DNA from: Octopus sinensis
Taxonomy: Eukaryota
Assembly (NCBI RefSeq): GCF_006345805.1
Contig: NC_043002.1
Location: 61,504,001-61,568,000 of the forward strand
Reading direction: 5' to 3'
Length of the DNA stretch: 64,000 nucleotides
Positions 19,643 to 57,208 of this stretch are shown here, in pieces. The position numbers were made by a program, and so were the translations under genes. A model generated the notes under the pieces. It was not told where the DNA came from and did no database searches. It saw only the letters and a list, made by a program, of their open reading frames with translations. The first letter of the stretch is position 1; every line of letters starts with the position of its first letter.

Positions 19643-20575
19643 TTAGTGCCTCGTTGTAACCTGGAGCGAATAGACCGTACGTCTGTTTACTGAAGTCTCT
19701 TTACAACATATTTGTTTCAGGTTGTCGCGAAATGATTTGCTTACCACAACATACAACATGAAGTTGAAAACGTTATTGATACAAGCCAGCACATCAAAGA
19801 ACAAGCAGATGGCAATATCTTTTTCATCGAGTAGGAATATTTTCAGGTAATTAATAGATGAAGGAAATGTGGTTAGGATAAAGAGTACGTTTATTGCAAT
19901 CACTGAATAAATAGTACTTTTTGACTTCTCTGAAATGTTTCGTTGCATATGTTGACCGAGGTCTGGTCGATGCAGTATTTTATACAACAAAAGGATAGAA
20001 CTTATTATCAAAATCATCCCTGGTACGAATGAATACATGATGTATACAGCACACAAAAAGTGCGTCTCATTATTTAAAAATACTGCTAGCGTTGTATACG
20101 TAACAGCAACACATACAAGAAGCAGAAGCAGTACTAGGTAAGGTTTATAACGTTGTGAAGAGTGAAATTGTGAAAATGGGCAAAATATTGCCAACAGACG
20201 TTCAAGAGATATGACAACGGTTATCCAGGAAGAATATATAAATAACGAATCAATGAATCCCGTGTATATTTCACTGCTAAAAATATCTGAAAGTGCCGTC
20301 TTAGGTTGAGAAGTAGTTGACAACCATATTGGCTTTGGTAAATATGTCGAAAGCGCAATGAAATCTACGAGTGCTAAACAATGAAGATATGGAACAACTT
20401 TTGTCTGACGCATTTGTTTCTTGAAAAATATTACGAAAATTGCTAAATTTCCGACAGATCCAAATATCAATGAAATTATTGAAACATACGGTATAATTCT
20501 AAGTAAATAAACATCTTTTTCATTTTCTGTCTGACTACTGTTGGTCAATACGCTCATCATTTCTGTTTTGTTCAT
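19643..20575 (-). CDS. Intronless class A 7TM receptor, copy A (310 aa), peptide-receptor-like/Srw-like orphan GPCR
   Basis: Seven hydrophobic segments; GSVGN (TM1), YLHCLALVD (TM2), SSWITVVISLERL (E/DRY variant), YSFVP (TM5), TTFP (TM6), NNVFNFMLY (NPxxY variant), helix 8 SKSFRDNLKQICC; N-terminal NKT/NSS sequons. Confidence 0.93.
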   Translation of the reverse strand: MNKTEMMSVLTNSSQTENEKDVYLLRIIPYVSIISLIFGSVGNLAIFVIFFKKQMRQTKVVPYLHCLALVDFIALSTYLPKPIWLSTTSQPKTALSDIFSSEIYTGFIDSLFIYSSWITVVISLERLLAIFCPFSQFHSSQRYKPYLVLLLLLVCVAVTYTTLAVFLNNETHFLCAVYIMYSFVPGMILIISSILLLYKILHRPDLGQHMQRNISEKSKSTIYSVIAINVLFILTTFPSSINYLKIFLLDEKDIAICLFFDVLACINNVFNFMLYVVVSKSFRDNLKQICCKETSVNRRTVYSLQVTTRH

Positions 20576-21249
20576 ATTTTCTTCTCATTCATCCACCGGT
20601 CAGCAATTGTGGACCACAAAAATAACTAAATGAATCCAATTTCTATTAAATTTTAAAAGATCCCATACGGTTTCACGCGTTGCTCTTTAATAACAATGTG
20701 ACACATCTAATTCGTGTCGAGCGATATCAGATAAATAAATAGATAAAATATGTAGGCAAGGAGATAGATTGGCATGTGCATATTTATATGCATGTGATTA
20801 CATGTGTACAGACATCGTTATAATGAATCCAGCTTCGTTGCTTTTGTAAAATGTACTACTACTTTTGTATTAATTACTGTATTTTAGATAACTGTGTCCT
20901 TCACGTTGTTGATGATGTGGCCATCGAAGACAATCACAATCAGGATCTTAATGATGATGATGACGATGGTGATTGCGAAGTCTATTGGGACAAAGATCAC
21001 TACTATGATGACGATGAAATTGTAAAGATGATTTCACTGGCCGGTTGACGTTGATGTTTTAACATTTTTAACAGCATGTACAACGATAGAAACTATGAAT
21101 CAATATGTCTTTCATTTTACAATACTACTTCCCAGAGGTTTGGACGCTGTTAAGTAACTGCAGTTGATCGGGTGTGGTCTTATTTTATGATTCTGCAAGT
21201 GTTAACAAAATATATTATTTGTTTAATGTACATGTTACACGGCTATTAA

Positions 21250-21750
21250 ATGAAACGACGTTCAAATATTATTACTGTCTCATACGACTTGTGAAACGAC
21301 CAAATGCATTGAACAGGTTCCCTTCGATCTTGTAAGTCATATTTTTTCCTTCGATCCTATAACACATAATTTACAACATGGTAGATATGAATGACTCCTA
21401 CTTTTGTGAGCATGGTTAATGGAATACCGCTCAACGATGCCCCAGTCATAGTAGTCAAAGTCGTTTAAATAGGAACATTGGAGGTGAAATGTTTGCGGTA
21501 ACTTGATGAGGAAAACTATCGCCCATCCACTTCAGATTTACGTAGATCGAGTGAAAATGACCAGATTCATAATAAAATACGTACGGCTTCTCAAAGGGTA
21601 ACTCTCTCAATGCAGGGCTTGAGAAACGACTTCATTGTCACGATGTAATGTACATGATCGATGCAACAATATTACTGGGGAAAAGTAAGGTGACACAGCA
21701 TGGAATTCATCGCTAACGTACGGCGATGAGTTCCTTCATTTTCAGTTGGA
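21250..21750 (-). mobile_element. Decayed Tc1/mariner-superfamily (DD37D/maT-like) transposase remnant, repeated in every unit
   Basis: In order on minus strand: ENEG..., FPQ, LKPCIERV, KPYVF, YLNDFDYYDWGIVER, NLFNAFGRFTSRM (cf. NEG..FP..VKPWI..V..RPYVFQQD..PDLNPLDY..WG..ER..ACxRFxxR). Copies at ~26030-26530, 31830-32315, 38830-39325, 49705-50535 (MITE-interrupted) and 57890-58325. Confidence 0.65.
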
Positions 21751-22199
21751 CCCGACCGCAGTCGTGTAAGTCTGAAAGCCGTGGTATACTAGCCAGACGG
21801 TGTAGGGCAGGCTTTCTTTAGGCCACCTTTTTTAGGCCACTCCCTTACTGGGGCGAGCAGTGCATTGCTAAATGTCTACTCAGTCGTCTGGGACGTTTTC
21901 TTATTCATCCGCTACACCGAGTTCGAAGATTAACAACCAAAGTCCCAAGCCGCCTACATCAGGAATGTGACTGTGACTTCCGATGGCTAATTCCACCTGT
22001 CACTTTTACCGTTGCCCCGTCACTGGAGGACTTCAGTGGAAAGTTGGGGCTGAAATACACAATGTGATATTCCCTACTGAGTGAGATCCAGCAGTTTTTA
22101 AACTTGGTCATTCCAAGTAGAGAATTTATATATAGTGTTGCCAAGACAAAGGATTTTTATTTAAAGTGACCTAAAAATAGGGATGGTATTAGAAGGGTC

Positions 22200-22560
22200 A
22201 AATCGAAAACAGGAAGAGGGGAATGAAGAAAGAAAAAAAAAGAAAGCGAAAAAAGAAGAGAAAGAAAAAATGAGAGAGGAAAAAAAGAGAAGGAGAAGAA
22301 AGTAAGATGAACCTAATAAAAAAATAACAAAATAAAAAATAAAAACAAAGAACTCTGAAAAGAGGAATGAAGGGAATAAAGAAAAAATAGAAAAGAAAAA
22401 TGAAGATATAGATCAGTCAGTGGTCAGTGGATACAATTTAAGAGTAAGAGTGGGAAGAGGAAGGGGTAAAGAGAGAAAGGTGTTCTAGCGTAAACAGATA
22501 GAAGGAATGACAAAAGTGTAGTTGTAGAGTCTAAGTGTAGAGGCAGAGATAGGGGATAGT
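22200..22560. repeat. Purine-rich (GA/A-rich) tract within the repeat unit
   Basis: Direct reading; copies at ~26980-27355, 32980-33360, 39760-40135 and 50810-51180. Confidence 0.85.
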
Positions 22561-22669
22561 AGTATGAAAACTTAAGGAATTTATATGTTTAGCAGTTCAG
22601 TGCTTCGTAATATAATTTTCACATATTGCATTTACACACACACACACACACATACACGCATACACACAT

Positions 22670-22701
<32 letters not shown>

Positions 22702-22982
22702 GTGTGTGTGTATATATATATACACACACATGTATATATATCTGTAAACGTAATATATGACAATTTTTCGATATCCATTTATAGAGATATTGTTTTATAG
22801 GTTTATTGTTCATAATTTTTACACATAATTTTTCTGTATTCTACCTTCTACCCTGCATTTTTCCCTGTGCGTATATAGACGTGTCTTACTCCCTGCTTTC
22901 TTTTACAAATTTTCATGTACTTTTGCCTTCAGTCTTGTTTTTTCTTGTACGTATGCGTCTATAGACGTGTGCATGAACTTTC

Positions 22983-23026
<44 letters not shown>

Positions 23027-24431
23027 TATATAGACGTGTGCGGGTATGTGCATATATAGACGTGCGTGCGTGAGTGCATACGGATATGTGCGTATATAGA
23101 CGTGTTTTACTCTTATGGTTTTTTCATACTTCTTTACACTTTTTTCTGTATTGTTGCCCCTAGCCCCGTTTTTGCTTGTGTTTGTGCGTATATAGACGTG
23201 TGTATGAACCGTTTTGGTTCGCGCGCGTGTGTGTGTGTGTTGAATTGTATATATATATGGTTTTGGGGGAACGGTGTGGGTGAGAATGTCTATGTTTGAA
23301 GTGGAGATGGATGAGTGTATACTTATAGGCGCATGTACGCGGGTGTACGGGCGCGCATGTGTAGGTATGGAGATGCGCTATTCACAAAAACTATGTACAT
23401 TTTACTTTTAATCCCTCCCCTCACTTAGCTGTCATTCAAATAGTTCTTTTGTCTTAATAACGATCATTCACACAATAATTTCCCATTGTTTAACGGTCGT
23501 TTTCATAGAATTTTTTCTAATGGCCGAATAACTAAATGGAGGGCGGTGTGAATTTCCACCCTGACATCCGAAACTCAGAGTTTATTATGGCTACCGAATA
23601 ATTGTCACATATCAAATTTACAGATAACTTCCTCTATTTACAAAATGTCGAGGTCTCTTCGTCTTAATATTTCTATCAATATTTATATATATAATGAGGA
23701 TAATGGGATATATTGCCCTGGTAGGAACCGAATTTCTCTGAAATCGGTTTCAGATGCTGGCTAACGAAAAGCCGCCTTATGTAGTACTCGAGCTAATGAG
23801 TTGTTAGACACTAGTAACTTCTCTCGTTGGGTAATTCTGTGCGTGCATGTTTTCCGTAGATTATTTAATAATATTAATAATGATAAGGAGAACAAAGATT
23901 TTTCACATCCAGAAACTTTATTTATCAATTCCTTAGAGTATATTCTGCGGATCTACACAGGTAAACCATGTGATTTTTGAAAGATATACATTTAAACAAT
24001 TTAGAGAAACATCGCACTGTGTATAATTATAATCATAGTAATAATTGAGAAACGAAAGCCCACCACACTATAAAATAAACCAAACACATTAGAATACCTT
24101 TACATTTATAATGTACCCTATGCAATAAGTGGAACAATAATCTATTAGAAATGGTCTAACTTTCTTAAGGAATATGTAAATAGAATGTTGAACAGGGAAT
24201 ACTAACTAGAAATTTATAAACATAGAGCATCACCATTTTGTGTAATGTATTTTAAAATACTTATATACAAACAGATATAGTTATATATTTTTATGCACAT
24301 GTAGATGAATATATGTATGTCTACATAAGCGGAATGTAGATTGATGATACATAAATTATTATCATTACGACAATTATAAATATATAAGTAGATACTTACG
24401 GAATTGATAAAGTATTGAAACAGTGAATGTC

Positions 24432-25364
24432 TTAGTGCCTCGTTGTAACCTGGAGCGAATACACATTACGTCTGTTTACTGAAGTATCTTTACAACATAT
24501 TTGTTTCAGGTTGTCGCGAAATGATTTGCTTACCACAACATACAACATGAAGTTGAAAGCATTATTGATACAAGCCAGCACATTAACAAACAAGAAGATG
24601 GCAATATCTTTTTCGTCGAGTAGGAATATTTTCAGGTAGATTATAGATGAAGGAAATGTGATAAGGAGAAAGAGTGCGTTTATTGCAATCACTGAATAAA
24701 TAGTACTTTTTGACTTCTCTGAAATGTTTCGTTGCATATGTTGACCGAGGTCTGGTCGATGCAGTATTTTATACAACAAAAGGATAGAACTTATTATCAA
24801 AATCATCCCTGGTACGAATGAATACATGATGTATACAGCACACAAAATGTACGTCTCATTATTTAAAAATACTGCTAGCGTTGTATACGTAACAGCAACA
24901 CATACAAGAAGCAGGAGCAGTACAATGTAAGGTTTATAACGTTGTGAAGAATGAAATTGTGAAAACGGGCAAAATATTGCCAACAGACGTTCAAGAGATA
25001 TGACAACGGTTATCCAGGAAGAATATATAAATAGAGAAGCGATTAAAGCCTTGTATATTTCACTGCTAAAAATATCTGAATGTGCCGTCTTAGGTTGAGA
25101 AGTAGTTGACAACCATATTGGTTTTGGTAAATATGTCGAAAGCGCAATGAAATCTACAAGAGATAAACAACGAAGATATGGAACAATTTTTGTCTGACGC
25201 ATTTGTTTCTTGAAAAATATTGCAAAAATTGCTAAATTTCCGACAGATCCAAATATCAATAATATTATTGAAATATACGGTATAGTTCTAAGTAAATAAA
25301 CATCTTTTTCATTTTCTGTCTGACTACTGTTGTTCAATACGCCCATCATTTCTGTTTTGTTCAT
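24432..25364 (-). CDS. Intronless class A 7TM receptor, copy B (310 aa)
   Basis: Same motifs as copy A; about 27/310 residues differ from A by manual count. Confidence 0.93.
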   Translation of the reverse strand: MNKTEMMGVLNNSSQTENEKDVYLLRTIPYISIILLIFGSVGNLAIFAIFFKKQMRQTKIVPYLRCLSLVDFIALSTYLPKPIWLSTTSQPKTAHSDIFSSEIYKALIASLFIYSSWITVVISLERLLAIFCPFSQFHSSQRYKPYIVLLLLLVCVAVTYTTLAVFLNNETYILCAVYIMYSFVPGMILIISSILLLYKILHRPDLGQHMQRNISEKSKSTIYSVIAINALFLLITFPSSIIYLKIFLLDEKDIAIFLFVNVLACINNAFNFMLYVVVSKSFRDNLKQICCKDTSVNRRNVYSLQVTTRH

Positions 25365-27485
25365 AATTTCTTCTCATTCATCCACCGGTCAGCAATTGTG
25401 GACCACAAAAATAACTAAATGAATCTCATTTCAATTAAATTTTAGAAGACCAGATATGGTTTCACCTGTTGCTGTTTAATAACAGTGTGACACATCTAAT
25501 TCGTGTCGAGCGATATCAGATAAATAAGTAGATAAATTATATAGGCAAGTAGATAGATTGGCATGTGTATATTTATATGCATGTGAATACATGTGTAGAG
25601 ACATCGTTATAATGAATCCAGGTTCGTTTTTATTGAGTTCTACTGCTTTTGTATTAATTACTGTATTTTAGATAACTGTGTCCTTTACGTTGTTGATGAT
25701 GTGGCCATCGAAAACAATGACAATGAGAAATCTAATGATGATTATGACGATGGTGATTGCGAAGTCTATCGGGACCAATATCACTACAATGATTACGATG
25801 AAATTGTAAAGGTGATCTTACTGGCTGGTTGATTTTGATGTTTTAACATTTTAACAGCATGTACAACGATAGAAACTATGAATCAATATCTCTTTATTTT
25901 ACAATACTTCTTCCCAGATGTTTGGACACTATTAAGTAAATGCAGTTGTTCGGGTGTGGTCTTATTTTATGATTCTGCAAGTTTAAAAAAAAAATATTAT
26001 TTGTTTAATGTATATGTTACACGGCTATTAAATGAAAAAACGTTCAAATATTATTACTGTCTCATACGACTTGTGAAACGACTAACTTCATTGAACAGGT
26101 GCCCTTCGATCTTGTAAGTCATATTCTTTCCTTCGAACTTATAACACATAATTTACAACATGATAGATATGAATGACTCCTAATTTTGTGAGCATGGTTT
26201 ATGGAATACCACTCAACGATGCCCGAGCCATATTAGTCATAGTCGCTTAAATAGGAGACATTGGAGGTGAAATGTTTGCGGTAACTTGATGAGGAAAACT
26301 GTCGCTCGTCCACTCAAGATTAATGTAGATCTGGTGAAAATGACCAGATTCATAATAATATACGTACAGCTTCTCAAAGGGTAACTCTCTCAATGCAGGG
26401 CTTGACAAACGACTTCATTGTCACGATGTAATGTACATGATCGATGCAAAAATATTACTGGGGAAAAGTGAGGTAACACTGCACGGAATTCATCGCTAAC
26501 GTTACGACGATGAGTTCCTTCATTTTCAGTTGCGAACCGACCGCAATTCTGTAAGTCTGAAAGCCGTAGTAAACTGGCCAGACGGTGTAGGACAGGCATT
26601 CTGTAGTCCAACTTTTCTATGCCACTCCCTTACTGGGGTGAGCAGTGCATTGCTAAAACTCTACTCAGTCGTCTGGGACGTTGTCTAAATCCTCCGCTAC
26701 CCCGAGTTCGAAGATTAACAGCCAAAGTCCCATGCCGCCTACATCATGAATGTGACTATGACTGCCGATGGCTAATTTCACCTGTCACTTTTACCGTTGA
26801 CCCGTGACTGGAGGACTTCAGTGGAAAGTTGGGGCTGAAATACACAATGTAATATTCCCTACTGAGTGAGATCCAGCAGTTTTTAAACTTGGTCATTTCA
26901 GGTAGAGAATTTATATATAGTGTTGCCGAGACAAAGGCTTTTTATTTAAAGTGACCTAAAAATAGGGATGGTATTAGAAGGGTCAAATCGAAAACAGGAA
27001 GAGGGGAATGAAGAAAGAAAGAAAAAAAGAAAGCGAAAAAAAGAAGAGAAAGAAAAGATGAGAGAGGAAAAAGAGAGAAGGAGAAGAAAGTAAGATGAAC
27101 CTAATAAAAAAATAACAAAATAAAAAATAAAAACAAAGAACCCTGAAAAGAGGAATAAAGGGAATAAAGAAAAAAAAAGAGAAAAGAAAAATGAAGATAT
27201 AGATCAGTCAGTGGTCAGTGGATACAATTTAAGAGTAAGAGTGGGAAGAGGAAGGGGTAAAGAGAGAAAGGTGTTCTAGCGTAAACAGAAAGAAGGAATG
27301 TCAAAAGTGTAGTTGTAGAGTCTAAGTGAAGAGCGGCAGAGATAGGGGATAGTAGTATGAAAACTTAAGGAATTTATATGTTTAGCAGTTCAGTGCTTAG
27401 TAATATAATTTTCACATATTGCATTTACACACACACACACATACATACATACATACACACATACACGCACACTCACACACATATA

Positions 27486-27576
<91 letters not shown>

Positions 27577-27985
27577 TATATATATATATCTGTAACGTAA
27601 TATATGACAATTTTTCGGTATCCATTTATAGAGATATTGTTTTATAGGTTTATTGTACATAATTTTTACACATACTTTTTCTGTATTCTACCATATACCC
27701 TGCAATTTTCCATGTGCGTATATAGACGTGTCTTTCACCCTGTTTTCTTTTACAAATTTTCCTGTACTTTTGCCTTCAGCCTTGTTTTTTCTTGTACGTA
27801 TGCGTCTATAGACGTGTGTATGAACTTTCTGTGCGCGCGCGCGCGTGTGTGTGTGTGTATGTGCTTATATAGACGTGTGCGGGTATGCGCATGTATAGAC
27901 GTGCGTGTGTGAGTGCATACGGATGTGTGCGTATATAGACGTGTTTTACTCCCATGGTTTTTTCATACTTCTTTACACATTTTTC

Positions 27986-29029
27986 GGATCTTTTCTTTTT
28001 GAAGGCCAGATTTTCCTAGTTAACTAAACAATTTGAAACTTCTTATACTGGTAGAATGTGTCAAAAGAAAATATTATCGTAAACAAAATTGAAAACAAAA
28101 TTGTAATTCGTAACTTAAACATAGTTTAATTTTAAGAATTTTAAGCAATGAAATCGCAGCATTCGAGCTCAAATTATTTACCTCTTCTGTCTTCTACATG
28201 TGCTAGAAATAACAGCTATATCTCTTAAAACGATTAATTCCGTCGCCCAATAAAAATATTAACGATATTTTTTGAATATTTTCTTTATTTTTTTTACCGA
28301 AAAGGCTTCTCCCATGGTTTTGAAGGGTCGGAAACAACAAAAACAAAACAATAATATGCTTAAATCGGTCTCGAGTTTGCGCGTGGAGTGTGAGTCGTAT
28401 TGTAAAAATTTGCGAAATATTTTTTCATAATACGGGCGCGCAGGTGTAGGTATAGAGATGCGCGCTTACACGAATACTATGTACAATTTTACAGCTTGTC
28501 GGAAGCTGTGATATAAAAATTTGTTGCGGCAAGTGGCAAAACGTGTATTTTTGCTTGTGTGCGTATATGTATATGTTCGTTTGTATGTGTGTGTACGCTT
28601 ATATATTAATTACTATGTGTGTGTGTGTGTGTCATTGTCCGTTTGTATGTGTGTGTACGCTTATATATCAATTACTATGTGTGTGTGTGTGTGTGTATAT
28701 GTCCGTTTGTATGTGTGTGTACGCTTATATATTAATTACTATGTGCTTGGGCAAATGTGTGTGTGTGTGTGTGTGTGGTGCGTCTGCTATATTTCTTTAT
28801 CAATATCGATAACGCAGCAATGCTGGGATTTCATTGGTTAAAATTCGAAGATGTTGGGATTTCATTGGTTAAAAATTCGTAAAAATTAAACTACGTTTAA
28901 GTTACGAATAACAATTTTGTTTTCAATATTGTTTACAATAATGTTTTCTTTTGACACATTCAACCAGGATACGAAGTTTCAAATTTTTTAGTTAACTAGG
29001 AAAATCTGGCCTTCAAAAAATAAAGATCC
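27986..29029. mobile_element. 1044-bp non-autonomous DNA transposon with ~180-bp TIRs (GGATC ends) and 8-bp TSD
   Basis: Left GGATCTTTTCTTTTTGAAGGCCAGATTTTCCTAGTTAACTAAA... is matched by the reverse complement of the right end ...TTAGTTAACTAGGAAAATCTGGCCTTCAAAAAATAAAGATCC. Flanks CATTTTTC / TATTTTTC; empty site at ~42137 (tatttttc once). Confidence 0.85.
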
Positions 29030-46659: not shown

Positions 46660-46708
<49 letters not shown>

Positions 46709-48103
46709 CGTATATAGATGTGTGCAGGTATGCGCATATATAGACGGGCGTGCGTGAGTGCATACGGATGTTTGCGTATATAGACGTGTTTTACTCCCAT
46801 GGTTTTTTGATACTTCTTTACACTTTTTTCTGTATTGTTGCCTCTAACCCTGTCTTTTCTTGTGTTTGTGCGTATATAGACGTGTGTATGAACCGTTTTG
46901 GTTAGCGCATGTGTTTGTGTGCGTTGGACTGTATATATGGTTTTTGGGGAATGGTGTGGGTGAGAATGTCTATGTTTCAAGTGATGATGGATGAGTGTAT
47001 ACGTATAGGCACATGTACGTGTGTGTACGAGCGCGCATGTGTAGGAATGGAGATGCGAACTTACGCGAATACTATGTGCGTTTTTATCCCCTACTTTTAA
47101 TCCCTCCCCTCATTTAGCGATCATTCAAATAGTTCTTTTGTCTTAATAACGATCAATCACACAATAATTTCCCATGGTTTAACGGTCGTTTTCATAGAAT
47201 TTTTTCTAATGGCCGGATAACTGAATGGAGGGCTGTGTGAATTTCCACCCTGACATCCGAAACTCGGTGTTTTATCATGGCTGCCGAATAATTGTCACAT
47301 ATTAAATTTACAGATAAATTCCTCAATTTACAAAATGTCGAGGTCTCGTCGTCTTACTATTTCTATCAATATTTATATATATAATGAGGATAATGGGATA
47401 TATTGCCCTGGTAGGAACCGAATTTCTCTGAAATCGGTTTCAGATGCTGGCTAACGAAAAGCACCCCTTATGTAGTACTCGAGCTAATGAGTTGTTAGAC
47501 ACTAGTAACTTCTCTCGTTGGGTAATTCTGTGCGTGCATATTTTCCGTAGATTACTTAATAATATTAATAATGATAAGGAGAACAAAGATTTTTCACATC
47601 CAGAAATTTTATTTATTAGTTCCTTAGAGCATATTCTCCGGAACTACCCAGGTAGACACGTGATTTTTGAAAGATGTACATTTAAACAATTTAGAGCAAC
47701 ACATAGCACTGTGTATAATTATAATTATAGTGATAATTGAGAAACGAAGGCCCACCGCACTATAACATAAATCAAACACATTAGAATACCTTTACATTTA
47801 TAATGTACCCTATGCAATAAGTGGAACAACAATCTATTAGAATATGTAAATAGAATGTTGAACAGGGAATACTAATTAGAAATTTATAAACATAGAACAT
47901 CGCCATATTGTGTAATGTATTTTAACATACTTATATACAAACATAGATATAGTTATATATTTGTATGCACATATAGATGAATATATGTACGTCTACATAA
48001 ACGGACTGAAGATTGATGATACATAAATTATCATTAGTACGACAATTATAAATATATAAGTAGATACTTACGGAATTGATAAAGTATTGAAACAGCGAAA
48101 TTC

Positions 48104-49036
48104 TTAGTGCCTCGTTGTAACCTGGAGCGAATACACCTTACTTCTTTTTACTGCAGACTCTTTACAACATATTTGTTTCAGGTTGTCGCGAAATGATTTG
48201 CTTACCACAACATACAACATGAAGTTGAAAACGTTATTCATACAAGCTAGAACACTAAAAAACAAGTAGAGGACCATATCTTTTTCATCGAGTAGGAATA
48301 TTACCAGGCAATTAATAGATGAAGGAAATGTGGTTAAGAGAAAGAGTGCGTTTATTGCAATCACTGCATAAATAGTACTTTTAGACTGCTCTGAAATTTT
48401 CCGTTGCAAATGTCGACCGAGGTCTGGTCGATGGTGTATTTTATACAACAAAAGGATAGAACTTATTATCAAAATCATGCTTGGTACGAATGAATACATG
48501 ATGTCTACAGCACACAAAAAGTACGCCTTAATATTTAAAAATACTGCTAGCGTTGTATACGTAACAGCAACACATACAAGAAGCAGAAGCAGTACTAGGT
48601 AAGGTTTATAACGTTGTGAAGAATGAAATTGTGAAAATGGGCGACATATTGCCAACAGACGTTCCAGAGATATGACAACGGTTATCCAGGAAGAATATAT
48701 AAATATAGAAGAAATGAAAGCATCGTATATTTCACTGCAAAAAATACCTGAATGTGCCGTGTTAGGTTCAGGAGCAGCTAACAACCAGATTGGTTTTGGT
48801 AAATATGTCGAAAGCGTAATGAAATCTACAAGAGCTAAACAATGAAGATATGGAACAATTTTTGTCTGACGCATTTGTTTCTTGAAAAATATTGCAAAAA
48901 TTGCTAAATTTCCGACAGATCCAAATATCAATAAAATTATTGAAACATACAGTATAGTTCTAAGTAAATAAACATTTTTAACATTTTCAATCTGGCTACT
49001 GTTGGGCATTTCGCACATGACTTCTGTTTTGTTCAT
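48104..49036 (-). CDS. Intronless class A 7TM receptor, copy E (310 aa from ATG 49036)
   Basis: Track start 49057 is GTG; the ATG aligned with the other copies gives 933 nt; all motifs intact. Confidence 0.92.
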   Translation of the reverse strand: MNKTEVMCEMPNSSQIENVKNVYLLRTILYVSIILLIFGSVGNLAIFAIFFKKQMRQTKIVPYLHCLALVDFITLSTYLPKPIWLLAAPEPNTAHSGIFCSEIYDAFISSIFIYSSWITVVISLERLLAICRPFSQFHSSQRYKPYLVLLLLLVCVAVTYTTLAVFLNIKAYFLCAVDIMYSFVPSMILIISSILLLYKIHHRPDLGRHLQRKISEQSKSTIYAVIAINALFLLTTFPSSINCLVIFLLDEKDMVLYLFFSVLACMNNVFNFMLYVVVSKSFRDNLKQICCKESAVKRSKVYSLQVTTRH

Positions 49037-49917
49037 ATCTTCTTCTAATTCTTCCACCGGTCAACAATTGTGCACCACAAAAATAATTAAATGAATCCAA
49101 TTTCTATTAAATTTTAAAAGACACCATACGGTTTCACGTGTTGCTGTTTTATAACAGTGTGACACATCTAATTCTAATTCGTGTCGAGTGTTACCAGATA
49201 AATAAGTCCATAAATTATATAGGTAAATAGAGAGATCGGCATGTGTATATTTATATGCATGTGAATACATGTGTAGAGACATCGTTATCATGAATCCAGC
49301 TTCGTTTTTGTTGATTGAGTTCTACTGCTTTCGTATTAATTACTGTATTTTAGATAACTGTGTCCTTCACGTTGTTGATGATGTGGCCATCGAAGACAAT
49401 CACAATGATGTTATTAATGATGATGATGGTGATGGCGAGGTCTAATGGAAAATATCACTAATATGATCTTCTTCACTTCCTTCTCTCTCTTCCCTTTTCA
49501 CTTTACTGGCCGGTTGATGTTGATGCTTTAACATTTTTAAAAGTATGTAGACCGATATGAATTAATCAATATTACTTTCGATTACAAAGAGTTTACAATA
49601 TTTCCCCCTAAATGTTTGGACACTGTTAAGTAAATGCAGTTGTTCGGGTGTGGTCTTGTTTTATGATTCTGCTTGTTTAATGTATATGTTACACGGCTAT
49701 TAAATGAAACGACGTTCAAATATTATTACTGTCTTATACGACTTGTGAAACGACTAACTGCATTGATCAGGTGCCCTTCGGTCTTATAACTCATATTTTT
49801 TCCTTCGATCTTATAAATGATTTTTACAACATGGTAGATATGAATGACTCCTACTTTTGTGAGCATGGTTAATGGAATACCGCTCAAAGTTGCCCCAGCC
49901 ATAGTAGTCAATATCGC

Positions 49918-50505
49918 GGATCTTTTCTAAAAGATTGACAGCATTTCTACTTAACTAAATAATTTGAAACTTCGTATACTGGTAGAATGTGTCAAAAGAA
50001 AACATAAATTTCATTAGTTTTTTTGAGAAAATTGTATTTTGTAACTTTTACGTAGTTTAATTCTTCGAATTTTAACCAATGAAATCCCAGCATTTGAGCT
50101 CAATTCATTTGCTGCGTCTAAGTAAACAGCACACACACACACGCACACGTCTTATTCATCGTTATTCATCGTTAATATATTTATTGGGCAACGAAATTCA
50201 TCGATTTAAGAGATATAGCTCTTATTTCTAGCACCTGCAGAAGACAGAATTGATAAGGATGAATAAGACGTGTGCGTGTGTGTGTGTGTGTGCTGTTTAC
50301 TTAGACGCAGCAAATGAATTGAGCTCAAATGCTGGGATTTCATTGGTTAAAATTCGAAGAATTAAACTACGTAAAAGCCACAAAATACAATTTTCTAAAA
50401 AAAAACTATTCAAATTAATGTTTTCTCTTGACACCTTCTACCAGTATACGAAGTTTCAAATTATTTAGTTAAGTAGAAATTCTGTCCATCTTTTAGAAAA
50501 GATCC
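49918..50505. mobile_element. 588-bp foldback MITE (GGATC ends, ~240-bp TIRs, 8-bp TSD), related to 27986-29029
   Basis: GGATCTTTTCTAAAAGA...TTAACTAAATAATTTGAAACTTCGTATACTGGTAGAA mirrored at 50259-50505. Flanks AATATCGC / AATGTCGC. Short core matches the reverse complement of ~28190-28265. Confidence 0.87.
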
Positions 50506-51297
50506 AATGTCGCTTAAATTGGAGAGATTGGAGGTGAAATGTTAGCGGTAACAAAGTCCCAAGCCGCCTATATCAGGAATGTGACTATGACTTCCGATGG
50601 CTACATCCACCTATCACTTTCACCATTGCCCCGTCACTGGAGGATTTCAGTGGAAAGTTGGGGCTGAAATACACAATGTGATATTCCCTACTGAGTGAGA
50701 TCCAGCAGTTTTTAAACTTGGTCATTCCAAGTAGAGAATTTATATATAGTGTTGCCGAGACAAAGGCTTTTTATTTAAAGTGACCTAAAAATAGGGATAG
50801 TATTAAAGGGTCAAATCGAAAACAGGAAGAGGGGAATGAAGAAAGAAAGAAAAAAATAAGCGAAAAAAAAGAGAAAGAAAAAATGAGAGAAAAAAGAGAG
50901 AAGAAGGAGAAGAAAGTAAGGAGAAATTAATAAAATAATAATAAAATAAAATATAAAAACAAAAAACCCTGAAAAGAGAAATGAAGGGAATAAAGAAAAA
51001 ATAGAAAAGAAAAATGAAGATATAGATCAGTCAGTGGTCAGTGGATACAATTTGAGAGTAGGAGTGGGAAGATGAAGGGTTAAAGGGAGAGAAAGGTGTT
51101 CTATTGTAAAAAGATAGAAGGAATGACAAATGTGTAGAAGTAGAGTGAAAGTGTAGGGGCAGAGATAGATGATAGTAGTATGAAAAATTAAGGAATTTAT
51201 GTTTAGCAGTTCAGTGCTTAGTAATATAATTGTCAAATATTGCATTTACACACACACATACACATATATATATATTTACATATATATATTACATATA

Positions 51298-51343
<46 letters not shown>

Positions 51344-51351
51344 ATATATAT

Positions 51352-51404
<53 letters not shown>

Positions 51405-51409
<5 letters not shown>

Positions 51410-53057
51410 GAGTTATTACCTTTTGTTAACAATTAACACAGATAAATAAATAAATAGTTACCAGGCCAGCAAAAATAAAGGTTGAAACTTCGTGTTTACG
51501 TTGAATATTTTGAATAATATGAATAAAAAATGGAGTTAACGCAGGTTTAAACAAGTATTTTTACTTTCTACATATGTTTCGAAAATTCCACTGATACTAT
51601 TCAAAAGAATAAAAGGTATAAACAATGCAATCTTCTCTTCGGGAAAGTGAAAAAACGAAACTCGTCAATACGACATTTTAGCAAAAAATGATGGATTCGT
51701 ATAGCGATAGACAGAACGCTATTAATATTGTTTAAAAAAACCTTATATGATATAACGTCATAAGTAGCTAACAGAAAGAGTAGGGATATTAATAGTGAAT
51801 GTTAAATATAAGGAAATTAAAAGTTTAAACTATATATAATGATAGAGACTACTTATATGCACTAAAAGTATGTTTCTGCCAATGCTTACATCTGTATGCT
51901 CGTTCTATAACCGTGTTTACTAGAGTATTTTTAGAAAAAATAATGAAAAATAGCTCAGAATTGCAGAGAAGACAGAATTTCTTGCCTTTGTCATATGGTA
52001 TCGAAATTGAGAGGATCAACCATTCTAAATGAAATTGTTCATTGTGGTCTTTTAAATCCCAAATCAGTTTGCTGAGACCGGTACTATTCCGTTTATTTCT
52101 ATCCCTAAATGTTGAGTATGGATAGAAATTCTTTTAGATAACTCTAACGATGTGCTTCCAATGTAAAATCGTACTTTATTACGAGTACTGATTATACACT
52201 GGTATATAGAATTTTTAATCTTAGAGTAACTTGACATAAATTTAATTCTATTGGAATTGACTTCAGATACAATAACCTTGTTATTAATATTTCTAGAGGG
52301 TTGGATGGTATTAGCTAAATTAATGTTAGTATTAGTAAATGTATTAATATTTAACAGTTTGTTATTATGAGAAGATATAATTTGCAAGAGATTTTTTGTG
52401 TTTGAAAAACCTATCCTAACCTTATGTGAATTAATTATAGAGTAATATCTGGAATTGTTTGGAAAATTCCTAGCAATAGCTTGACGAAACAGCAGTGGGA
52501 GATTAGATTTAATTTGTCTCCCGTAAGGAATTATTAACCAAATATTTTTACTAGTATTCATAGCGTAATTACTTTTGTAAATTCTATAATGTAGATAAGA
52601 TTTCTAGTCGTAAAAGAATTATTGATAACAAACATAACTTACGCACCGATACAAAGCGAATGAAGGCATATAACCCTTATTTATTCCCCTTTTACCGATC
52701 TAAAAGTAAATATAACACCTTCAAAAATAATTACGCTATCATTATATATAGTTTAAACTTTAATTTCCTTTATATTTAACATTCACTATTAATATCCCTA
52801 CTCTTTCTGTTAGCTACATATGACGTTATATCATATAACGTTTTTTTAAACAATATTAATAGCGTTCTGTCTATCGCTATACGAATCCATCATTTTTTGC
52901 TAAAATGTCGTATTGACGAGTTTCGTTTTTTCACTTTCGCGAAGAGAAGATTGCATTGTTTATACCTTTTATTCTTTTGAATAGTATCAGTGGAATTTTC
53001 GAAACATATGTAGAAAGTAAAAATACTTGTTTAAACCTGCGTTAACTCCATTTTTTA

Positions 53058-53064
<7 letters not shown>
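51405..53064 (-). mobile_element. Truncated Penelope-like element (GIY-YIG remnant 52064-52561) with a ~330-bp inverted duplication
   Basis: KNIWLIIPY...KSNL...FRQAIARNFP...KVRIGFSNTKNLLQII...SIYQCII...FYIGST...KRISIH. 51517-51845 is the reverse complement of 52736-53064. Inserted in the unit's (TA)n tract. Confidence 0.8.
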
Positions 53065-53130
<66 letters not shown>

Positions 53131-53197
53131 ATATATATAAATGTAATATATGACAATTATTCGGTAGCCCTTTATAGAGATATTGTTTATAGGTTTA

Positions 53198-54673
53198 CTA
53201 GAATTATGACCCGTCGTGCCGGGTCATAGTGCTAGTGCATGTATATATGTGTATATATATATATATATGTACATATTACACGTACATCTATATATATACA
53301 TCTACACATAAAATGCAAAATACAAAGTTATATCTTGATATCGCTAGTGATAACAATACTCAAAATGTATAACAGACTGGAATTGTAGGCCCGTCCTACG
53401 TCCCATATATAAAGGTGAAAATAAATTATTTCCACTTTGCAAAGTTGGAGCCAAGTACTCCCTTGCACGCTGCGTAGACTCGAACTTTGCTTCTATTGTG
53501 GAGAATTTACCGCCTCTGGTTAGATATCTTTCATAGTCGCACCAAGAAACCTTTCGATGGTGCTTTCCTCGAGGTGTTCAAATCTTTTTTTTTTCTCTAC
53601 ATTGTATACTTTATAGACAATAGTCTTTTCTTTAATTTAATTTTTTATTTCGTTTGGTGATGTTATCCTAGATTCACCGTCTTTGTCGGTGATCAATCCG
53701 AAATAGGTTTGTATTTCTTCCATTTTAATTTTAATGAGTTTGCGCCCGCCGACGGCTGCAGCGAAATTCATTTTTTGACTATCTTCTATCGAAGGCATTC
53801 TAACAAAAATGCTTCCTTGTAAATGGTGAAAACATTGTCAATTTACCCAAAAAGAGACACAATTCAATTTTTAAACAATAACCAAAACTCCTTCTCCCAA
53901 AGGGGGACGGTTACAGTTTACAATTATTTACCAAATGCAACACAACAACGTTTCCCTTGCGAGGAACCAACAAACGTGTTAACAATAGTTAAACAGTGAA
54001 TCAAAAAGCAGTACGCAGTTGAAGATATAGTCCTTAATGTATAATAGTCCATCTGGACTATTCCATTTCTGCACGCTAATTTCATTCTTAATTTATTCCC
54101 ATTCATGTGAAACCACTTATTCAAGTTCAAGTCATTGATGCAATTTTATAACAATTGCTATTTTTCCTTTTGTTATGTTACGATTATATTATACTTTAGT
54201 TTGATTTTAATTATTATTTACTACATATAATTCAATTGTTATTATTATCTCTAATTTTTATTGTTGAAGTGAAAGTATCTGACATAAAATAGAGAAATGC
54301 TTTTGTTTCACTTTTAACACGTCATACTGAAATAGTGAAGAAGATATGATATTGCTATGGGCTCGCCCTAGGCAAGAAGTTGAACATTTCTTTTACCCAT
54401 GAAACTACATGGATCCTAAGTAAGGCATGTTTAAAATTTAAATGAAATTGGTTATGTAGTTCTCAAGTTTTAGGAAATCGTAGTGGAGAAGATATGATAT
54501 TGCTGTGGGCTTGCCCTAGGCAAAAAGTTAAAACTTAATTTTTGCCGATGACACTCCCCGGACCCTAAGTAAGGCATGTGTAAAATTTGAATGAAATTAG
54601 TTGTATAGTTCTCAAGTTTTAGGGAAACACACAGACAGTCAGACACACATTCTCAGTTTTATATATATAAAGA
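53198..54673 (-). mobile_element. Non-autonomous Helitron H3
   Basis: A|TCTTTATATATATAAAACTGAG ... ATGACCCGGCACGACGGGTCATAATTCTAG|T; same site as H1 and H2. Confidence 0.88.
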
Positions 54674-56275
54674 TTGCTCATATTTATTACACATACTTTT
54701 TCTGTATTCTAGCTTCTACCCTGCATTTTTCCCTGTGCGCTAATAGACGTGTCTTTCTCATTGATTCCTTTTACAAGTTCTCGTGTATTTTTGCCTTCAT
54801 CCTTGTTTTATCTTGTACATGTGCGTCTATAGACGTGTGTATGAACTTTCTGTGCGTTTGTGTGTGCTTATATAGACGTGTGTGGGTTTGCGCATATATA
54901 GACGTGCGTGCGTGAGTGCATACGAGTGTGTGCGGATATAGACGTGATTACTCTCATGATTTTTTTCATACTTCTTTACGCTTTTTTTCTGTATTGTTGC
55001 CCCTAGCCCTGTTTTTTCTTGTGTTTGTGCGTTTATAGTCGTGTGTATGAACCGTTTTGGTTCGCGTGTGTGTGTGTGTGTTGAATTGTATATATATATG
55101 GTTTTGGGGAATAGTGTGGGTGAGAATGTCTATGTTTCAAGTGAAGATGGATGAGTGTATACTTATAGGCGCATGTACGTGGGTGTACGGGCGCGAATGC
55201 GTAGGTATGGAGATGCGCTTACACAAAAACTTTGTACATTTTTACCCCCTACTTTTAATCCCTCCCTCACTTAGCGGTCATTCAAAGAGTTCTTTTGTCT
55301 TAATAACGATCAATCACACAGTGATTTCCCATGGTTTACGGTCGTTTTCATAGACTTTTTTCTAATGGCCGGATAACTGAATGGAGGGCTGTGTGAATTT
55401 CCACCCTAACATCCGAAACTCAGAGTCTTATCATGGCTACTGAATGATTGTCACATATCAAATTTACAGATAAATTCCTCTATTTACAAAATGTCGAGGT
55501 CTCGTCGTCTTACTATTTCTATCAATATATATATAATGAGGATAATGGGATATATTGCCCTGGTAGGAACCGAATTCCTCTGAAATCGGTTTCAGATGCT
55601 GGCTAACGAAAAGCCCCCTTATGTAGTACTCGAGCTAATGAGTTGTTAGACACTAGTAACTTCTCTCGTTGGGTAATTCTGTGCGTGCATATTTTCCGTA
55701 GATTACTTAATAATATTAATAATGATAAGGAGAACAAAGATTTTTTCACATCCAGAAACTTTATATTCAATTCTTAGAGCATATTCTCCGGATCTACACA
55801 GGTAGACCATGTGATTTTTGAAAGATATACATTTAAACAATTTGGAGAAACACATCGCACTGTGTATAATTATAATCATAGTGATAATAGAGAAACGAAG
55901 TTCCACGTCACTATAACATAAACCAAACACATTAGAATACCTTTACATTTATAATGTACCCTATGCAATAAGTGGAACAATAATCTATTAGAAATGGTCT
56001 AACTTTCTTAAGGAATATGTAAATAGAATGTTGAACCGGGAATACTAATTAGAAATTTATAAACATAGAACATCACCATATTGTGTAATGTATTTTAAAA
56101 TATTATATACAAACATAGATATAGTTATATATTTGTATGCACATATAGATGAATATACGTATGTCTACATAAACGGAATGAAGATTGATAATACAAAAAT
56201 TATTATCATTACGACAATTATAAATATATAAGTAGATACTTACGGAATTGATAAAGTATTGAAACAGCGAATGTC

Positions 56276-57208
56276 TTAGTGCCTCGTTGTAACCTGGAGC
56301 GAATACACATTACGTCTGTTTACTGCAAACTCTTTACAACATATTTGTTTGAGGTTGTCGCGAAATGATTTGCTTACCACAACATACAACATGAAGTTGA
56401 AAACGTTATTCATACAAGCTAGAACACTAAAAAACAAGTAGAGGACCATATCTTTTTCATCGAGTAGGAATATTACCAGGCAATTAATAGATGAAGGAAA
56501 TGCAGTTAGGATAAAGAGTACGTTTATTGCAATCACTGCATAAATAGTACTTTTTGACTGCTCTGAAATTTTCCGTTGCAAATGTCGACCGAGGTCTGGT
56601 CGATGCTGTATTTTATACAACAAAAGGATAGAACTTATTATCAAAATCATCCCTGGTACGAATGAATACATGATGTCTACAGCACACAAAATGTACACCA
56701 TTTTATTTAAAAATACTGCTAGCGTTGTATACGTAACAGCAACACATACAAGAAGCAGGAGCAGTACAATGTAAGGTTTATAACGTTGTGAAGAATGAAG
56801 TCTTGAAAACGGGCAAAATATTGCCAACAGACGTTCCAGAGATATAATAACGGTTATCCAGGAAGAATATATAAATATAGAAGAAATGAAAGCATCGTAT
56901 ATTTCACTGCTAACAATATCTGAATGTGCCGTCTTAGGTTGAGAAGTAGTTGACAACCATATTGGTTTTGGTAAATATGTCGAAAGCGCAATGAAATCTA
57001 CAAGAGATAAACAATGAAGATATGGAACAATTTTTGTCTGACGCATTTGTTTCTTGAATAATATTGCAAAAATTGCTAAATTTCCGACAGATCCTAATAT
57101 CAATAATATTATTGAAATATACTGTATAGTTCTAAGTAAATACACATTTTTATAATTTTCTATCTGGCTACTGTTGTTCAATACGCCCAGCGTTTCTGTT
57201 TTGTTCAT
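56276..57208 (-). CDS. Intronless class A 7TM receptor, copy F (310 aa; possible 317 aa from in-frame ATG 57229)
   Basis: Track start 57250 is GTG; ATG 57208 aligns with the other copies; all motifs intact. Confidence 0.92.
   Translation of the reverse strand: MNKTETLGVLNNSSQIENYKNVYLLRTIQYISIILLILGSVGNLAIFAILFKKQMRQTKIVPYLHCLSLVDFIALSTYLPKPIWLSTTSQPKTAHSDIVSSEIYDAFISSIFIYSSWITVIISLERLLAIFCPFSRLHSSQRYKPYIVLLLLLVCVAVTYTTLAVFLNKMVYILCAVDIMYSFVPGMILIISSILLLYKIQHRPDLGRHLQRKISEQSKSTIYAVIAINVLFILTAFPSSINCLVIFLLDEKDMVLYLFFSVLACMNNVFNFMLYVVVSKSFRDNLKQICCKEFAVNRRNVYSLQVTTRH

What the first reader, a model, noticed from the sequence alone, without database searches (positions are those of the whole stretch)
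19700..56950. Paralogue differences land on canonical ligand-pocket positions
Manual alignment of copies A/B/C/D/E/F by generic numbering: 3.29 T/K/K/D/D/D; 3.33 D/A/S/S/S/S; 3.37 I/I/M/V/I/I; 5.43 Y/Y/Q/Q/D/D; 6.55 Y/Y/Y/Y/C/C; 6.57 K/K/K/K/V/V; 7.35 C/F/F/F/Y/Y; 7.36 L/L/M/R/L/L; 7.39 D/N/N/N/S/S. Several are charge reversals. Intracellular motifs (KKQMRQTK, ISLERL, YVVVSKSFRDNLKQICCK) are essentially invariant. Established: 3.29, 3.33, 5.43, 6.55, 7.35 and 7.39 line the class A orthosteric pocket. Inference: diversifying selection on ligand specificity with conserved G-protein coupling.
Basis: partly seen in the sequence, partly recalled or inferred. Interest (0 to 1): 0.72.

Follow-up and report, generated by a model that had tools for sequence, protein, structure and literature searches.

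The report
Young tandem GPCR paralogues, cephalopod genome
Six recently duplicated receptor genes sit side by side in a cephalopod genome; their cell-interior half is conserved and their whole outward-facing half varies at about the neutral rate, which is the ordinary pattern for such receptor expansions and does not prove selection on the ligand pocket.

Summary
They are a picked subset: 99 of 310 aligned codons differ among the six copies.

The genes are intact, intronless class-A (peptide-receptor-like, Srw-like) GPCRs. They lie in a ten-member head-to-tail array with four degraded or divergent relatives, in a cephalopod genome.

Supported:
- The extracellular side is more variable than the intracellular side (45% vs 21% of codons, odds ratio 3.1). 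Omega is about 1.1 outside and 0.5 inside.
- Indels are excluded from the reading frames, so the genes are maintained.

Not supported:
- Pocket specificity. An a-priori list of 40 pocket positions is no more variable than neighbouring outer-helix residues (p=0.27).
- Variability shows no helical periodicity. The N-terminus, ECL1 and C-tail vary as much.
- Four of the nine sites ride on one E/F-specific block whose synonymous divergence is also raised.
- Only one of the nine positions is a true charge reversal.

Site models nominally favour positive selection (p about 3e-7). The copies are heavily reticulated by gene conversion, and the calibrated p ranges from about 0.02 to 0.33.

Positions 3.29 and 5.43 remain plausible specificity sites. 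The overall pattern is already described for cephalopod and lophotrochozoan GPCR expansions.

The parts
19643..20575 (-). Copy A: intact 310-aa class-A GPCR ORF. Pocket residues T3.29, D3.33, Y5.43, D7.39.
   Evidence: (Pfam 7tm_1 35.5 bits, Srw 49.1 bits)
24432..25364 (-). Copy B: intact 310-aa paralogue, 91% identical to A.
30289..31221 (-). Copy C: intact 310-aa paralogue, 87% identical to A.
37296..38219 (-). Copy D: intact 307-aa paralogue. It carries the only indel among the six, an in-frame 9-nt deletion in ECL1.
48104..49036 (-). Copy E: intact 310-aa paralogue, counted from the ATG of MNKTE.
56276..57208 (-). Copy F: intact 310-aa paralogue.
20261..20263 (-). Codon 105 (generic 3.29) in copy A. 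One of the two reader sites with at least three nonsynonymous changes on any tree (T/K/D).
   Evidence: top 3% entropy in 12 wider-family homologues
20042..20044 (-). Codon 178 (generic 5.43) in copy A. The second robust multi-hit reader site (Y/Q/D).
   Evidence: top 8% family entropy
48227..48454 (-). Codons 195-270 of copy E (ICL3 to TM7).
   Evidence: 13 of 14 EF|ABCD informative sites fall at codons 201-266; pS 0.127, pN/pS 0.88
56399..56626 (-). The same E/F-specific block (codons 195-270) in copy F.
42746..43660 (-). Copy G: an older paralogue (40-42% identity) embedded in the array. TM7 runs into a microsatellite, and there is no helix 8 or tail.
2898..3812 (-). Degraded family member (55% identity to A), split into three ORF fragments by in-frame stops.
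7573..8410 (-). Degraded family member (44% identity) with a frameshift.
58687..59605 (-). Degraded family member (42% identity) with a frameshift and stops.
18902..58615 (-). Head-to-tail array of 5-8 kb duplication units. Non-coding flanks are 85-94% identical between units, about as diverged as the coding sequence.

Best explanation
This is a tandem array of young, intronless, orphan class-A GPCR genes in a cephalopod genome. The genes resemble peptide receptors and nematode Srw receptors. Pairwise dS is about 0.07-0.13.

The array evolves by birth and death. Units of 5-8 kb were duplicated head to tail, some copies decayed, and the survivors exchange sequence by gene conversion.

Purifying selection keeps all six reading frames open. 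It also holds the cytoplasmic half (ICL1, the ERL motif, inner TM halves, helix 8) nearly constant, presumably because all copies use the same transducers.

The whole extracellular half changes at or slightly above the neutral rate. This half includes the N-terminus, ECL1, the tops of TM3, TM5 and TM7, and the pocket positions within them. Amino-acid differences therefore pile up across the outward face. Some fall on canonical pocket positions because those positions lie in that half, not because they are singled out.

A few sites, 3.29 and 5.43 foremost, are plausible ligand-specificity switches. Selection for new ligands is inferred, not shown.
For: Shown:
- Family identity. Pfam 7tm_1 and Srw score above their cut-offs. 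The family profile hits GHSR, GPR139, NTSR1, GALR2, KISS1R and TRHR at E about 1e-37. The best named relative is an Octopus bimaculoides GPCR at 66% identity.
- Array. There are ten family members, all on the minus strand, six of them intact.
- Neutral yardstick. Flanks change at 0.27-0.32 per nt on the tree, matching the synonymous rate of 0.28.
- ORF maintenance. There are 40 gap runs in 1570 flank columns against one in-frame gap in 930 nt of CDS, P=1e-9.
- Overall omega is 0.80-0.85.
- Regional omega is 0.30-0.50 inside, 1.06 in outer TM halves and 1.35-1.39 in N-terminus plus ECLs. Extracellular versus intracellular OR is 3.07, p<1e-4.
- Gene conversion. 44% of informative site pairs are incompatible against 16% in a simulation without recombination. 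The PHI-like test gives p=0.007-0.04. Homoplasy is similar in flanks (13%), synonymous sites (17%) and nonsynonymous sites (22%). Sixteen informative sites follow an alternating ((A,C,E),(B,D,F)) pattern.
- Pocket charge by copy.
- Positions 3.29 and 5.43 are hypervariable in the wider family.

Inferred: shared G-protein coupling, and ligand divergence.
Against: - ML site models on one tree and on four partitions still prefer a class with omega of 3.8-6.3 (2dlnL 24-30).
- The tops of TM3, TM5 and TM7 reach omega 1.5-1.6 (p=0.006-0.02, chosen post hoc). The a-priori set TM3+5+6+7 gives 1.28-1.33 (p=0.03-0.07).
- My best-matched reticulation null reaches the observed count-based LRT in only 1.6% of replicates. 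Some genuine positive selection is therefore not excluded and may be present.
- The pocket list comes from my own knowledge, not from a structure of this protein. The AlphaFold model was unusable (pLDDT 43.6).
Confidence: 0.7

Rival explanations
1. One reading: diversifying selection acts specifically on orthosteric-pocket residues to create six ligand specificities, while G-protein coupling is conserved.
For: - M1a/M2a, M7/M8 and M8a/M8 all give 2dlnL of about 30. The four-partition version gives 23.9.
- Positions 3.29 and 5.43 have posterior above 0.9 and need at least three nonsynonymous changes on any tree.
- Seven of the 24 multi-state columns lie on the pocket list, against 3.1 expected (p=0.023).
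- The pocket list is more variable than the rest of the protein (OR 1.94, p=0.04).
- Pocket net charge spans -2 to +2.
- The calibrated null gives p of about 0.016.
Against: - There is no enrichment over neighbouring outer-TM residues (p=0.27 for variable columns, p=0.18 for multi-state columns) and no helical periodicity (p=0.6).
- Pocket-list omega is 1.12-1.23, not significantly above 1.
- The highest-posterior sites include N- and C-terminal tail codons.
- The tree-free test gives p=0.33. Five sites have at least three changes, against 5.4 expected under near-neutrality.
- M2a over-predicts amino-acid state diversity: 11.5 columns with four or more states against 2 observed.
- Four of the nine sites sit on one block with raised dS and pN/pS of 0.88.
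- E and F share all nine states yet differ at 41 other residues.
Confidence: 0.25
2. Pure relaxation: the six copies are redundant, the ligand-facing half has simply lost constraint, and the copies are on the way to the pseudogene state already reached by four neighbours.
For: - Extracellular omega is statistically indistinguishable from 1 (1.07-1.17).
- Coding divergence equals flank divergence.
- Four degraded or truncated relatives lie in the same array.
- The tree-free site test is non-significant.
- Canonical microswitch residues are already missing: S3.25, T6.48, F7.50 and L3.51.
Against: - All six frames are intact although 24 gap runs would be expected at the flank rate (P=1e-9).
- About 30-45% of codons are strongly constrained, and ICL1 and helix 8 are invariant.
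- The missing microswitch residues are family-wide, not recent losses. F272 is at least 90% conserved in 62 homologues.
- Omega of 1.5-1.6 at the tops of TM3, TM5 and TM7 exceeds the neutral rate.
Confidence: 0.2
3. Mosaic artefact: the apparent pocket divergence mainly reflects segments imported by gene conversion from older paralogues. On this view one event, not many substitutions, explains the clustered differences.
For: - 13 of 14 EF-specific informative sites lie in codons 201-266, where synonymous divergence is raised.
- Incompatibility is pervasive and the PHI-like test is significant.
- Reticulation alone inflates the LRT critical value to 10-11.
Against: - This explains only the TM6-TM7 states of E and F. 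It does not explain 3.29, 3.33 or 5.43, which differ among A-D as well.
- No donor copy for the block is present in the window. G and the degraded copies are only 40-55% identical.
- Breakpoint partitioning improves parsimony only slightly (217 to 206 steps; the one-breakpoint permutation gives p=0.48).
Confidence: 0.15

Closest known systems
Cephalopod-specific class-A GPCR expansions (Ritschard et al. 2019, PMC6408891, groups 1 and 2)
   Same: Both are class-A receptors related to molluscan neuropeptide receptors and expanded in cephalopods. Both are partly arranged in tandem clusters and show elevated omega. In that study no individual site reached BEB 95% either.
   Different: I did not show that this array belongs to their group 1 or 2. 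The best O. bimaculoides protein is only 66% identical. Here the copies are much younger (dS about 0.1), and gene conversion among them is demonstrated.
[quoted passage not shown] 2025, PMC11886862)
   Same: Both show tandem arrangement with truncated and pseudogene members. Both show higher variability in the extracellular segments of all TM helices and in the ECLs. Both lack the TM3-ECL2 disulfide in cephalopods. All of these are seen here (S at 3.25).
   Different: They describe ECL2 of 25-30 residues. Here ECL2 is about three residues (my topology). A chemosensory role is as untested here as it is there.
Nematode Srw chemoreceptor family (Pfam PF10324) and FMRFamide/peptide-receptor-like GPCRs
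   Same: The Pfam Srw model scores 49-53 bits against a cut-off of 22.2. The NFxxY-type TM7 motif is shared across the 62-sequence family.
   Different: The best-matching stretch covers only residues 170-292 (TM5 to helix 8). The phylum is different, and no orthology is implied.
Vertebrate peptide receptors with solved structures (GHSR, GPR139, NTSR1, GALR2, KISS1R, TRHR)
   Same: These are the closest solved structures by profile search (E 2e-37 to 1e-33). The TM anchors align without ambiguity.
   Different: A single copy barely hits the PDB (E 0.003). Here 3.25 is Ser, 6.48 Thr, 7.50 Phe and 3.51 Leu, and ECL2 is almost absent.
Vertebrate odorant, TAAR and vomeronasal receptor arrays (analogy; own knowledge)
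   Same: All are single-exon class-A genes in tandem arrays that evolve by birth and death with gene conversion. Variability is concentrated toward the ligand side.
   Different: They are not homologous as a subfamily. In those systems the pocket-site selection has structural and functional backing, which is absent here.

Membership tests
Class A (rhodopsin-like) GPCR, Pfam PF00001 | Profile score above the curated cut-off | tested here: met
   Copies A and E score 35.5 and 38.4 bits against a cut-off of 30.5. Copy G scores 22.2, below the cut-off.
Class A (rhodopsin-like) GPCR, Pfam PF00001 | Seven transmembrane helices plus helix 8 | tested here: met
   DSSP on the model gives helices 19-52, 61-87, 94/102-136, 144-166, 170-202, 220-248, 253-278 and 280-290. 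The model itself is low-confidence (pLDDT 43.6). The topology agrees with the profile alignment to GHSR.
Class A (rhodopsin-like) GPCR, Pfam PF00001 | N1.50, D2.50, R3.50, P5.50 and P6.50 anchors | tested here: met
   N43, D71, R126, P185 and P238 are invariant in the six copies and at least 90% conserved in 62 homologues.
Class A (rhodopsin-like) GPCR, Pfam PF00001 | Canonical microswitches: full E/DRY, CWxP with W6.48, NPxxY with P7.50 | tested here: not met
   The motifs read ERL (L at 3.51), TTFP (T at 6.48; A in copy F) and NFMLY (F at 7.50). F at 7.50 is family-wide.
Class A (rhodopsin-like) GPCR, Pfam PF00001 | C3.25-ECL2 disulfide | tested here: not met
   Position 3.25 is Ser101 in all six copies. 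The only nearby Cys is C175, at 5.40. This absence is reported for cephalopod expansions.
Srw-type serpentine receptors, Pfam PF10324 | Profile score above the curated cut-off | tested here: met
   The copies score 49.1 and 52.7 bits against 22.2, in two stretches. The best stretch covers only residues 170-292.
Lophotrochozoan/cephalopod lineage-specific class-A GPCR expansion | Tandem genomic arrangement with truncated or pseudogene members | tested here: met
   There are ten members on one strand within 57 kb: six intact, one truncated and three broken.
Lophotrochozoan/cephalopod lineage-specific class-A GPCR expansion | No one-to-one orthologues in other species | tested here: inconclusive
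   The best hits among 5.8 billion proteins are 52-66% identical, and none is closer. The source species is unknown, and its own proteins are not in the collection.
Lophotrochozoan/cephalopod lineage-specific class-A GPCR expansion | Extracellular TM segments and loops more variable than the rest | tested here: met
   OR 3.07 (p<1e-4) for the extracellular versus intracellular side. OR 2.69 (p=0.001) for outer versus inner TM halves.
Genes with site-specific diversifying selection (M2a/M8 criterion) | LRT for a class with omega above 1 is significant | tested here: met
   2dlnL is 29.8 (M1a/M2a), 30.4 (M7/M8) and 29.6 (M8a/M8) with my own codon-model code on the tree ((A,B),(C,D),(E,F)).
Genes with site-specific diversifying selection (M2a/M8 criterion) | The signal survives recombination | tested here: inconclusive
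   Four partitions give 2dlnL 23.9. The count-based LRT of 13.9 is exceeded in 3 of 192 matched reticulation-null replicates. Tree-free counts give 2.2, p=0.33.
Genes with site-specific diversifying selection (M2a/M8 criterion) | Selected sites cluster on the ligand cavity in 3D | not testable with these tools
   No confident model was obtained and no coordinates are returned. The proxy tests are negative within the outer TM halves (p=0.18-0.27), and no helical periodicity is seen.

The most novel reading that the evidence does not exclude
The array is a newly born chemoreceptor-like subfamily in which selection has re-tuned the electrostatics of an unusually open pocket. The pocket is open because ECL2 is about three residues long and there is no TM3-ECL2 disulfide. 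The re-tuning runs from acidic (A: D3.33 and D7.39; E/F: D3.29 and D5.43) to basic (B/C: K3.29). Gene conversion between alternating units shuffles these pocket residues combinatorially, so recombination is part of how new specificities are generated rather than only a nuisance for the test.
Probability: 0.15. Interest if true: 0.55.

Novelty: new member of a known kind. Interest (0 to 1): 0.3.

Why it matters
Cephalopod GPCR expansions are candidates for lineage-specific sensing, but none has a known ligand. This array offers a compact natural experiment. It holds six intact receptors about 8% apart, with an invariant transducer face and a small set of charge-changing differences (3.29, 3.33, 5.43, 7.36, 7.39) that could guide deorphanisation and swap experiments.

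There is also a methodological point. In tandem arrays that exchange sequence, standard site-model p-values can be wrong by several orders of magnitude (3e-7 nominal here against 0.02-0.33 calibrated). A hand-picked list of variable pocket residues is not evidence of selection.

As biology, the pattern is the expected one for such families.

Tried and rejected
- AlphaFold2 with the 11 admissible sequences gave pLDDT 43.6. I used it only for helix boundaries and ran no fold search.
- A single-sequence PDB search was too weak to be useful (E 0.003), so I replaced it with a 62-sequence profile.
- Two literature searches for a citable list of pocket positions failed. The 40-position list therefore rests on my own knowledge.
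- Word-indexed homologue searches returned only 5 and 8 proteins. The exhaustive representative search gave 4545 hits, but these are unnamed.
- Looking up copy B's protein in public assemblies found nothing. P0001 sits on a 1.2-kb Logan contig without context. The species is not identified beyond cephalopod, probably octopod.
- Parsimony breakpoint partitioning barely helps (217 to 206 steps, one-breakpoint p=0.48). The conflict is fine-grained rather than a few clean breakpoints.
- Site models with 8 and 12 equal partitions gave rising LRTs. I reject these as artefacts of noisy local synonymous rates, and the 12-partition fit did not leave its starting values.
- The first recombination nulls, with random donor-recipient conversions, under-represented shared conflicting sites: 37 informative sites against 64 observed. 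I replaced them with a matched two-tree mixture.

Full report
**What is in the window**

The sequence is AT-rich (GC 30-45%) and rich in microsatellites. It carries retroelement fragments: an RVT_1 reverse-transcriptase ORF and a GIY-YIG ORF. It is eukaryotic.

Six intact ORFs of 307-310 aa lie on the minus strand:
- A 19643-20575
- B 24432-25364
- C 30289-31221
- D 37296-38219
- E 48104-49036
- F 56276-57208

They are 82-91% identical to copy A. They match Pfam 7tm_1 (35-38 bits, cut-off 30.5) and 7TM_GPCR_Srw (49-53 bits, cut-off 22.2).

A tblastn inventory shows ten family members, all on the same strand. The other four are:
- G, an older copy (42746-43660, about 41% identical), whose TM7 runs into a microsatellite.
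- Three broken copies at 2898-3812, 7573-8410 and 58687-59605.

The closest named protein is an Octopus bimaculoides GPCR (UniRef A0A0L8ICK4) at 66% identity. Only 5-8 close relatives exist in the word-indexed collection. A profile of 62 homologues hits solved peptide receptors at E about 1e-37: GHSR, GPR139, NTSR1, GALR2, KISS1R and TRHR. The window is therefore a cephalopod lineage-specific array of orphan class-A receptors.

**Checking the observation**

I used N43=1.50, D71=2.50, R126=3.50, P185=5.50, P238=6.50 and F272=7.50 as anchors. The profile-to-GHSR alignment confirms them. With these anchors, each of the nine residue strings and each of the three invariant motifs is exactly as stated.

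The selection of sites is the problem.
- 99 of 310 aligned codons vary in amino acid, and only 28 vary synonymously alone.
- Only 3.29 is a true charge reversal. The other three reversals are in the N-terminus (codon 20), ECL2 (170) and ECL3 (251).
- ICL2 and ICL3 are not invariant.

**Neutral yardstick and constraint**

The duplication units are 5-8 kb. Their non-coding flanks are 85-94% identical, as diverged as the CDS.

On the tree ((A,B),(C,D),(E,F)), flanks show 0.27-0.32 changes per nt. This equals the synonymous estimate of 0.28.

Flanks carry 40 gap runs in 1570 columns. The CDS carries one, and it is in frame (P=1e-9). All six genes are therefore maintained.

Whole-gene omega is 0.80-0.85, and pairwise values run from 0.37 to 1.12.

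**Where the changes are**

| Region | Omega |
|---|---|
| ICLs plus helix 8 | 0.30-0.35 |
| Inner TM halves | 0.41-0.50 |
| Outer TM halves | 1.06-1.07 |
| N-terminus plus ECLs | 1.35-1.39 |
| C-tail | about 1.15 |

Variable codons number 60 of 132 on the extracellular side against 38 of 178 on the intracellular side (OR 3.07, p<1e-4).

I tested a 40-position pocket list fixed in advance from my own knowledge of class-A ligand contacts.
- 18 of the 40 positions vary, with omega 1.12-1.23 (not significantly above 1).
- The list is enriched against the whole protein (OR 1.94, p=0.04).
- It is not enriched against other outer-TM residues (OR 1.42, p=0.27).
- Multi-state columns behave the same way: p=0.023 overall, 0.18-0.23 within the outer half.

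Variability comes in contiguous runs (105-111, 254-258) with no helical periodicity (p=0.6).

The tops of TM3, TM5 and TM7 reach omega 1.5-1.6 (p=0.006-0.02, chosen post hoc). The a-priori set TM3+5+6+7 gives 1.28-1.33 (p=0.03-0.07).

**Site models**

I wrote my own GY94/F3x4 implementation. It gave the following:
- M0: omega 0.85.
- M2a: 40% of sites at omega 0, 52% at omega 1, 7.6% at omega 6.3.
- 2dlnL: 29.8 for M1a/M2a, 30.4 for M7/M8, 29.6 for M8a/M8.

BEB-type posteriors above 0.9 fall on codons 8, 11, 19, 29, 105 (3.29), 178 (5.43) and 300.

**Recombination**

The copies conflict strongly with any single tree.
- 44% of informative site pairs are incompatible, against 16% in simulations without recombination.
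- A PHI-like test gives p=0.007-0.04.
- Of 64 informative sites, 32 fit ((A,B),(C,D),(E,F)). Sixteen fit an alternating ((A,C,E),(B,D,F)) pattern, for example codon 68 ASASAS. Sixteen fit neither.
- Excess homoplasy is alike in flanks (13%), synonymous changes (17%) and nonsynonymous changes (22%). That pattern points to gene conversion rather than convergent selection.

Many high-posterior sites are exactly such conflict patterns, for example 11 TNTNPN, 300 TNTMKN and 8 SGGSCG.

The tests behave as follows once this is taken into account.
- A count-based analogue of M1a/M2a gives 2dlnL 13.9 on the fixed tree. It gives 2.2 (p=0.33) when each site is allowed its own best tree.
- On any tree, only five sites need three or more replacements (19, 100, 105, 178, 300), against 5.4 expected under near-neutrality.
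- M2a also over-predicts state diversity: 11.5 columns with four or more residues against 2 observed.
- In neutral-plus-purifying simulations whose reticulation matches the observed split counts, the 5% critical value rises to 10-11. The observed 13.9 is exceeded in 3 of 192 replicates.
- Four-partition ML still gives 23.9. Finer partitions were unreliable.

The calibrated evidence for any omega>1 class therefore lies between p of about 0.02 and 0.33.

**The E/F block**

Thirteen of the 14 sites that separate E/F from A-D lie in codons 201-266.

In codons 195-270, synonymous divergence between the groups is 0.127, against 0.079 within A-D. pN/pS there is 0.88.

They are not independent hits.

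E and F share all nine reader states but differ at 41 other residues. These are concentrated in the first 100 codons, where pN/pS is 1.44.

- Positions 3.29 and 5.43 are multi-hit on any tree. They rank in the top 3% and 8% of entropy among 12 wider-family homologues.
- D7.39 is conserved in 9 of those 12 homologues but is kept only in copy A.

These are sensible targets for experiments. They are not proof of selection.

**Comparison with what is known**

Ritschard et al. 2019 described cephalopod class-A expansions in tandem clusters. They found branch-level omega above 1 and no site with BEB above 95%.

Nath et al. 2025 described lophotrochozoan lineage-specific class-A expansions. These show tandem arrangement, pseudogenes, higher entropy in extracellular TM segments and no TM3-ECL2 disulfide in cephalopods.

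This array shows all of those features. It differs in its near-absent ECL2, and it adds a documented case of pervasive gene conversion. I class it as a new member of a known kind.

**Verdict**

- The conserved inside and variable outside are supported.
- Pocket-targeted diversifying selection is unproven.

Interest is modest.

Noticed in passing
window 42746-43660 (-): Copy G is about 41% identical to A-F but shares the distal 3' flank of the duplication unit. Its ORF leaves TM7 (LYAAV) and continues into an (AT/AC)-type microsatellite read as IYIYIY, so helix 8 and the tail are missing. It is probably a truncated pseudogene.
   Followed up: partly
window 2898-3812, 7573-8410 and 58687-59605 (all -): Three further family members are broken by in-frame stops or frameshifts (55%, 44% and 42% identical to A). 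They bracket the intact array, which is a signature of birth-and-death evolution.
   Followed up: partly
codons 8, 11, 31, 68, 147, 172, 173, 230, 242, 300 of copies A-F: Residues alternate along the array, with A, C (and sometimes E) against B, D and F; codon 68 reads ASASAS. The 3' flanks of B, D and F are mutually close (4.9-6.4% divergence). This suggests duplication of a two-gene unit followed by homogenisation between neighbours, or the reverse order.
   Followed up: partly
window 51517-51845 and 52736-53064: Inverted repeat arms of 329 nt are 98% complementary and 890 nt apart. They enclose a 165-aa ORF (52064-52561, -) with a weak GIY-YIG-like YIGST...R..H motif. This is probably a recent mobile-element insertion between E and F.
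   Followed up: partly
window 17267-17845 (+) and 60756-61625 (-): A GIY-YIG-domain ORF (suggestive of a Penelope-like element) and an RVT_1 reverse-transcriptase ORF lie at the edges of the array.
   Followed up: no
residues 101, 127, 153, 236 and 272 of all six copies: Canonical class-A residues are replaced: C3.25 by S, Y3.51 by L, W4.50 by L, W6.48 by T (A in copy F) and P7.50 by F. ECL2 is only about three residues. F7.50 is at least 90% conserved across 62 homologues, so this is an old family trait rather than decay.
   Followed up: partly
90 nt upstream and downstream of each of copies A-F: The immediate flanks are about 90% conserved. A GTAAGT lies about 35 nt after the stop codon, and a pyrimidine-rich stretch ending in CACAA/CACAG lies about 35 nt before the ATG. 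The coding exon may be flanked by UTR introns. F has an in-frame upstream ATG (MDELEED...) where E has GTG.
   Followed up: no
window 15389-17376 and many other places: Long (CA)n, (TA)n and (TATG)n-type microsatellites produce spurious long ORFs such as 15389-16066 and 16891-17376. They recur between the array units.
   Followed up: no
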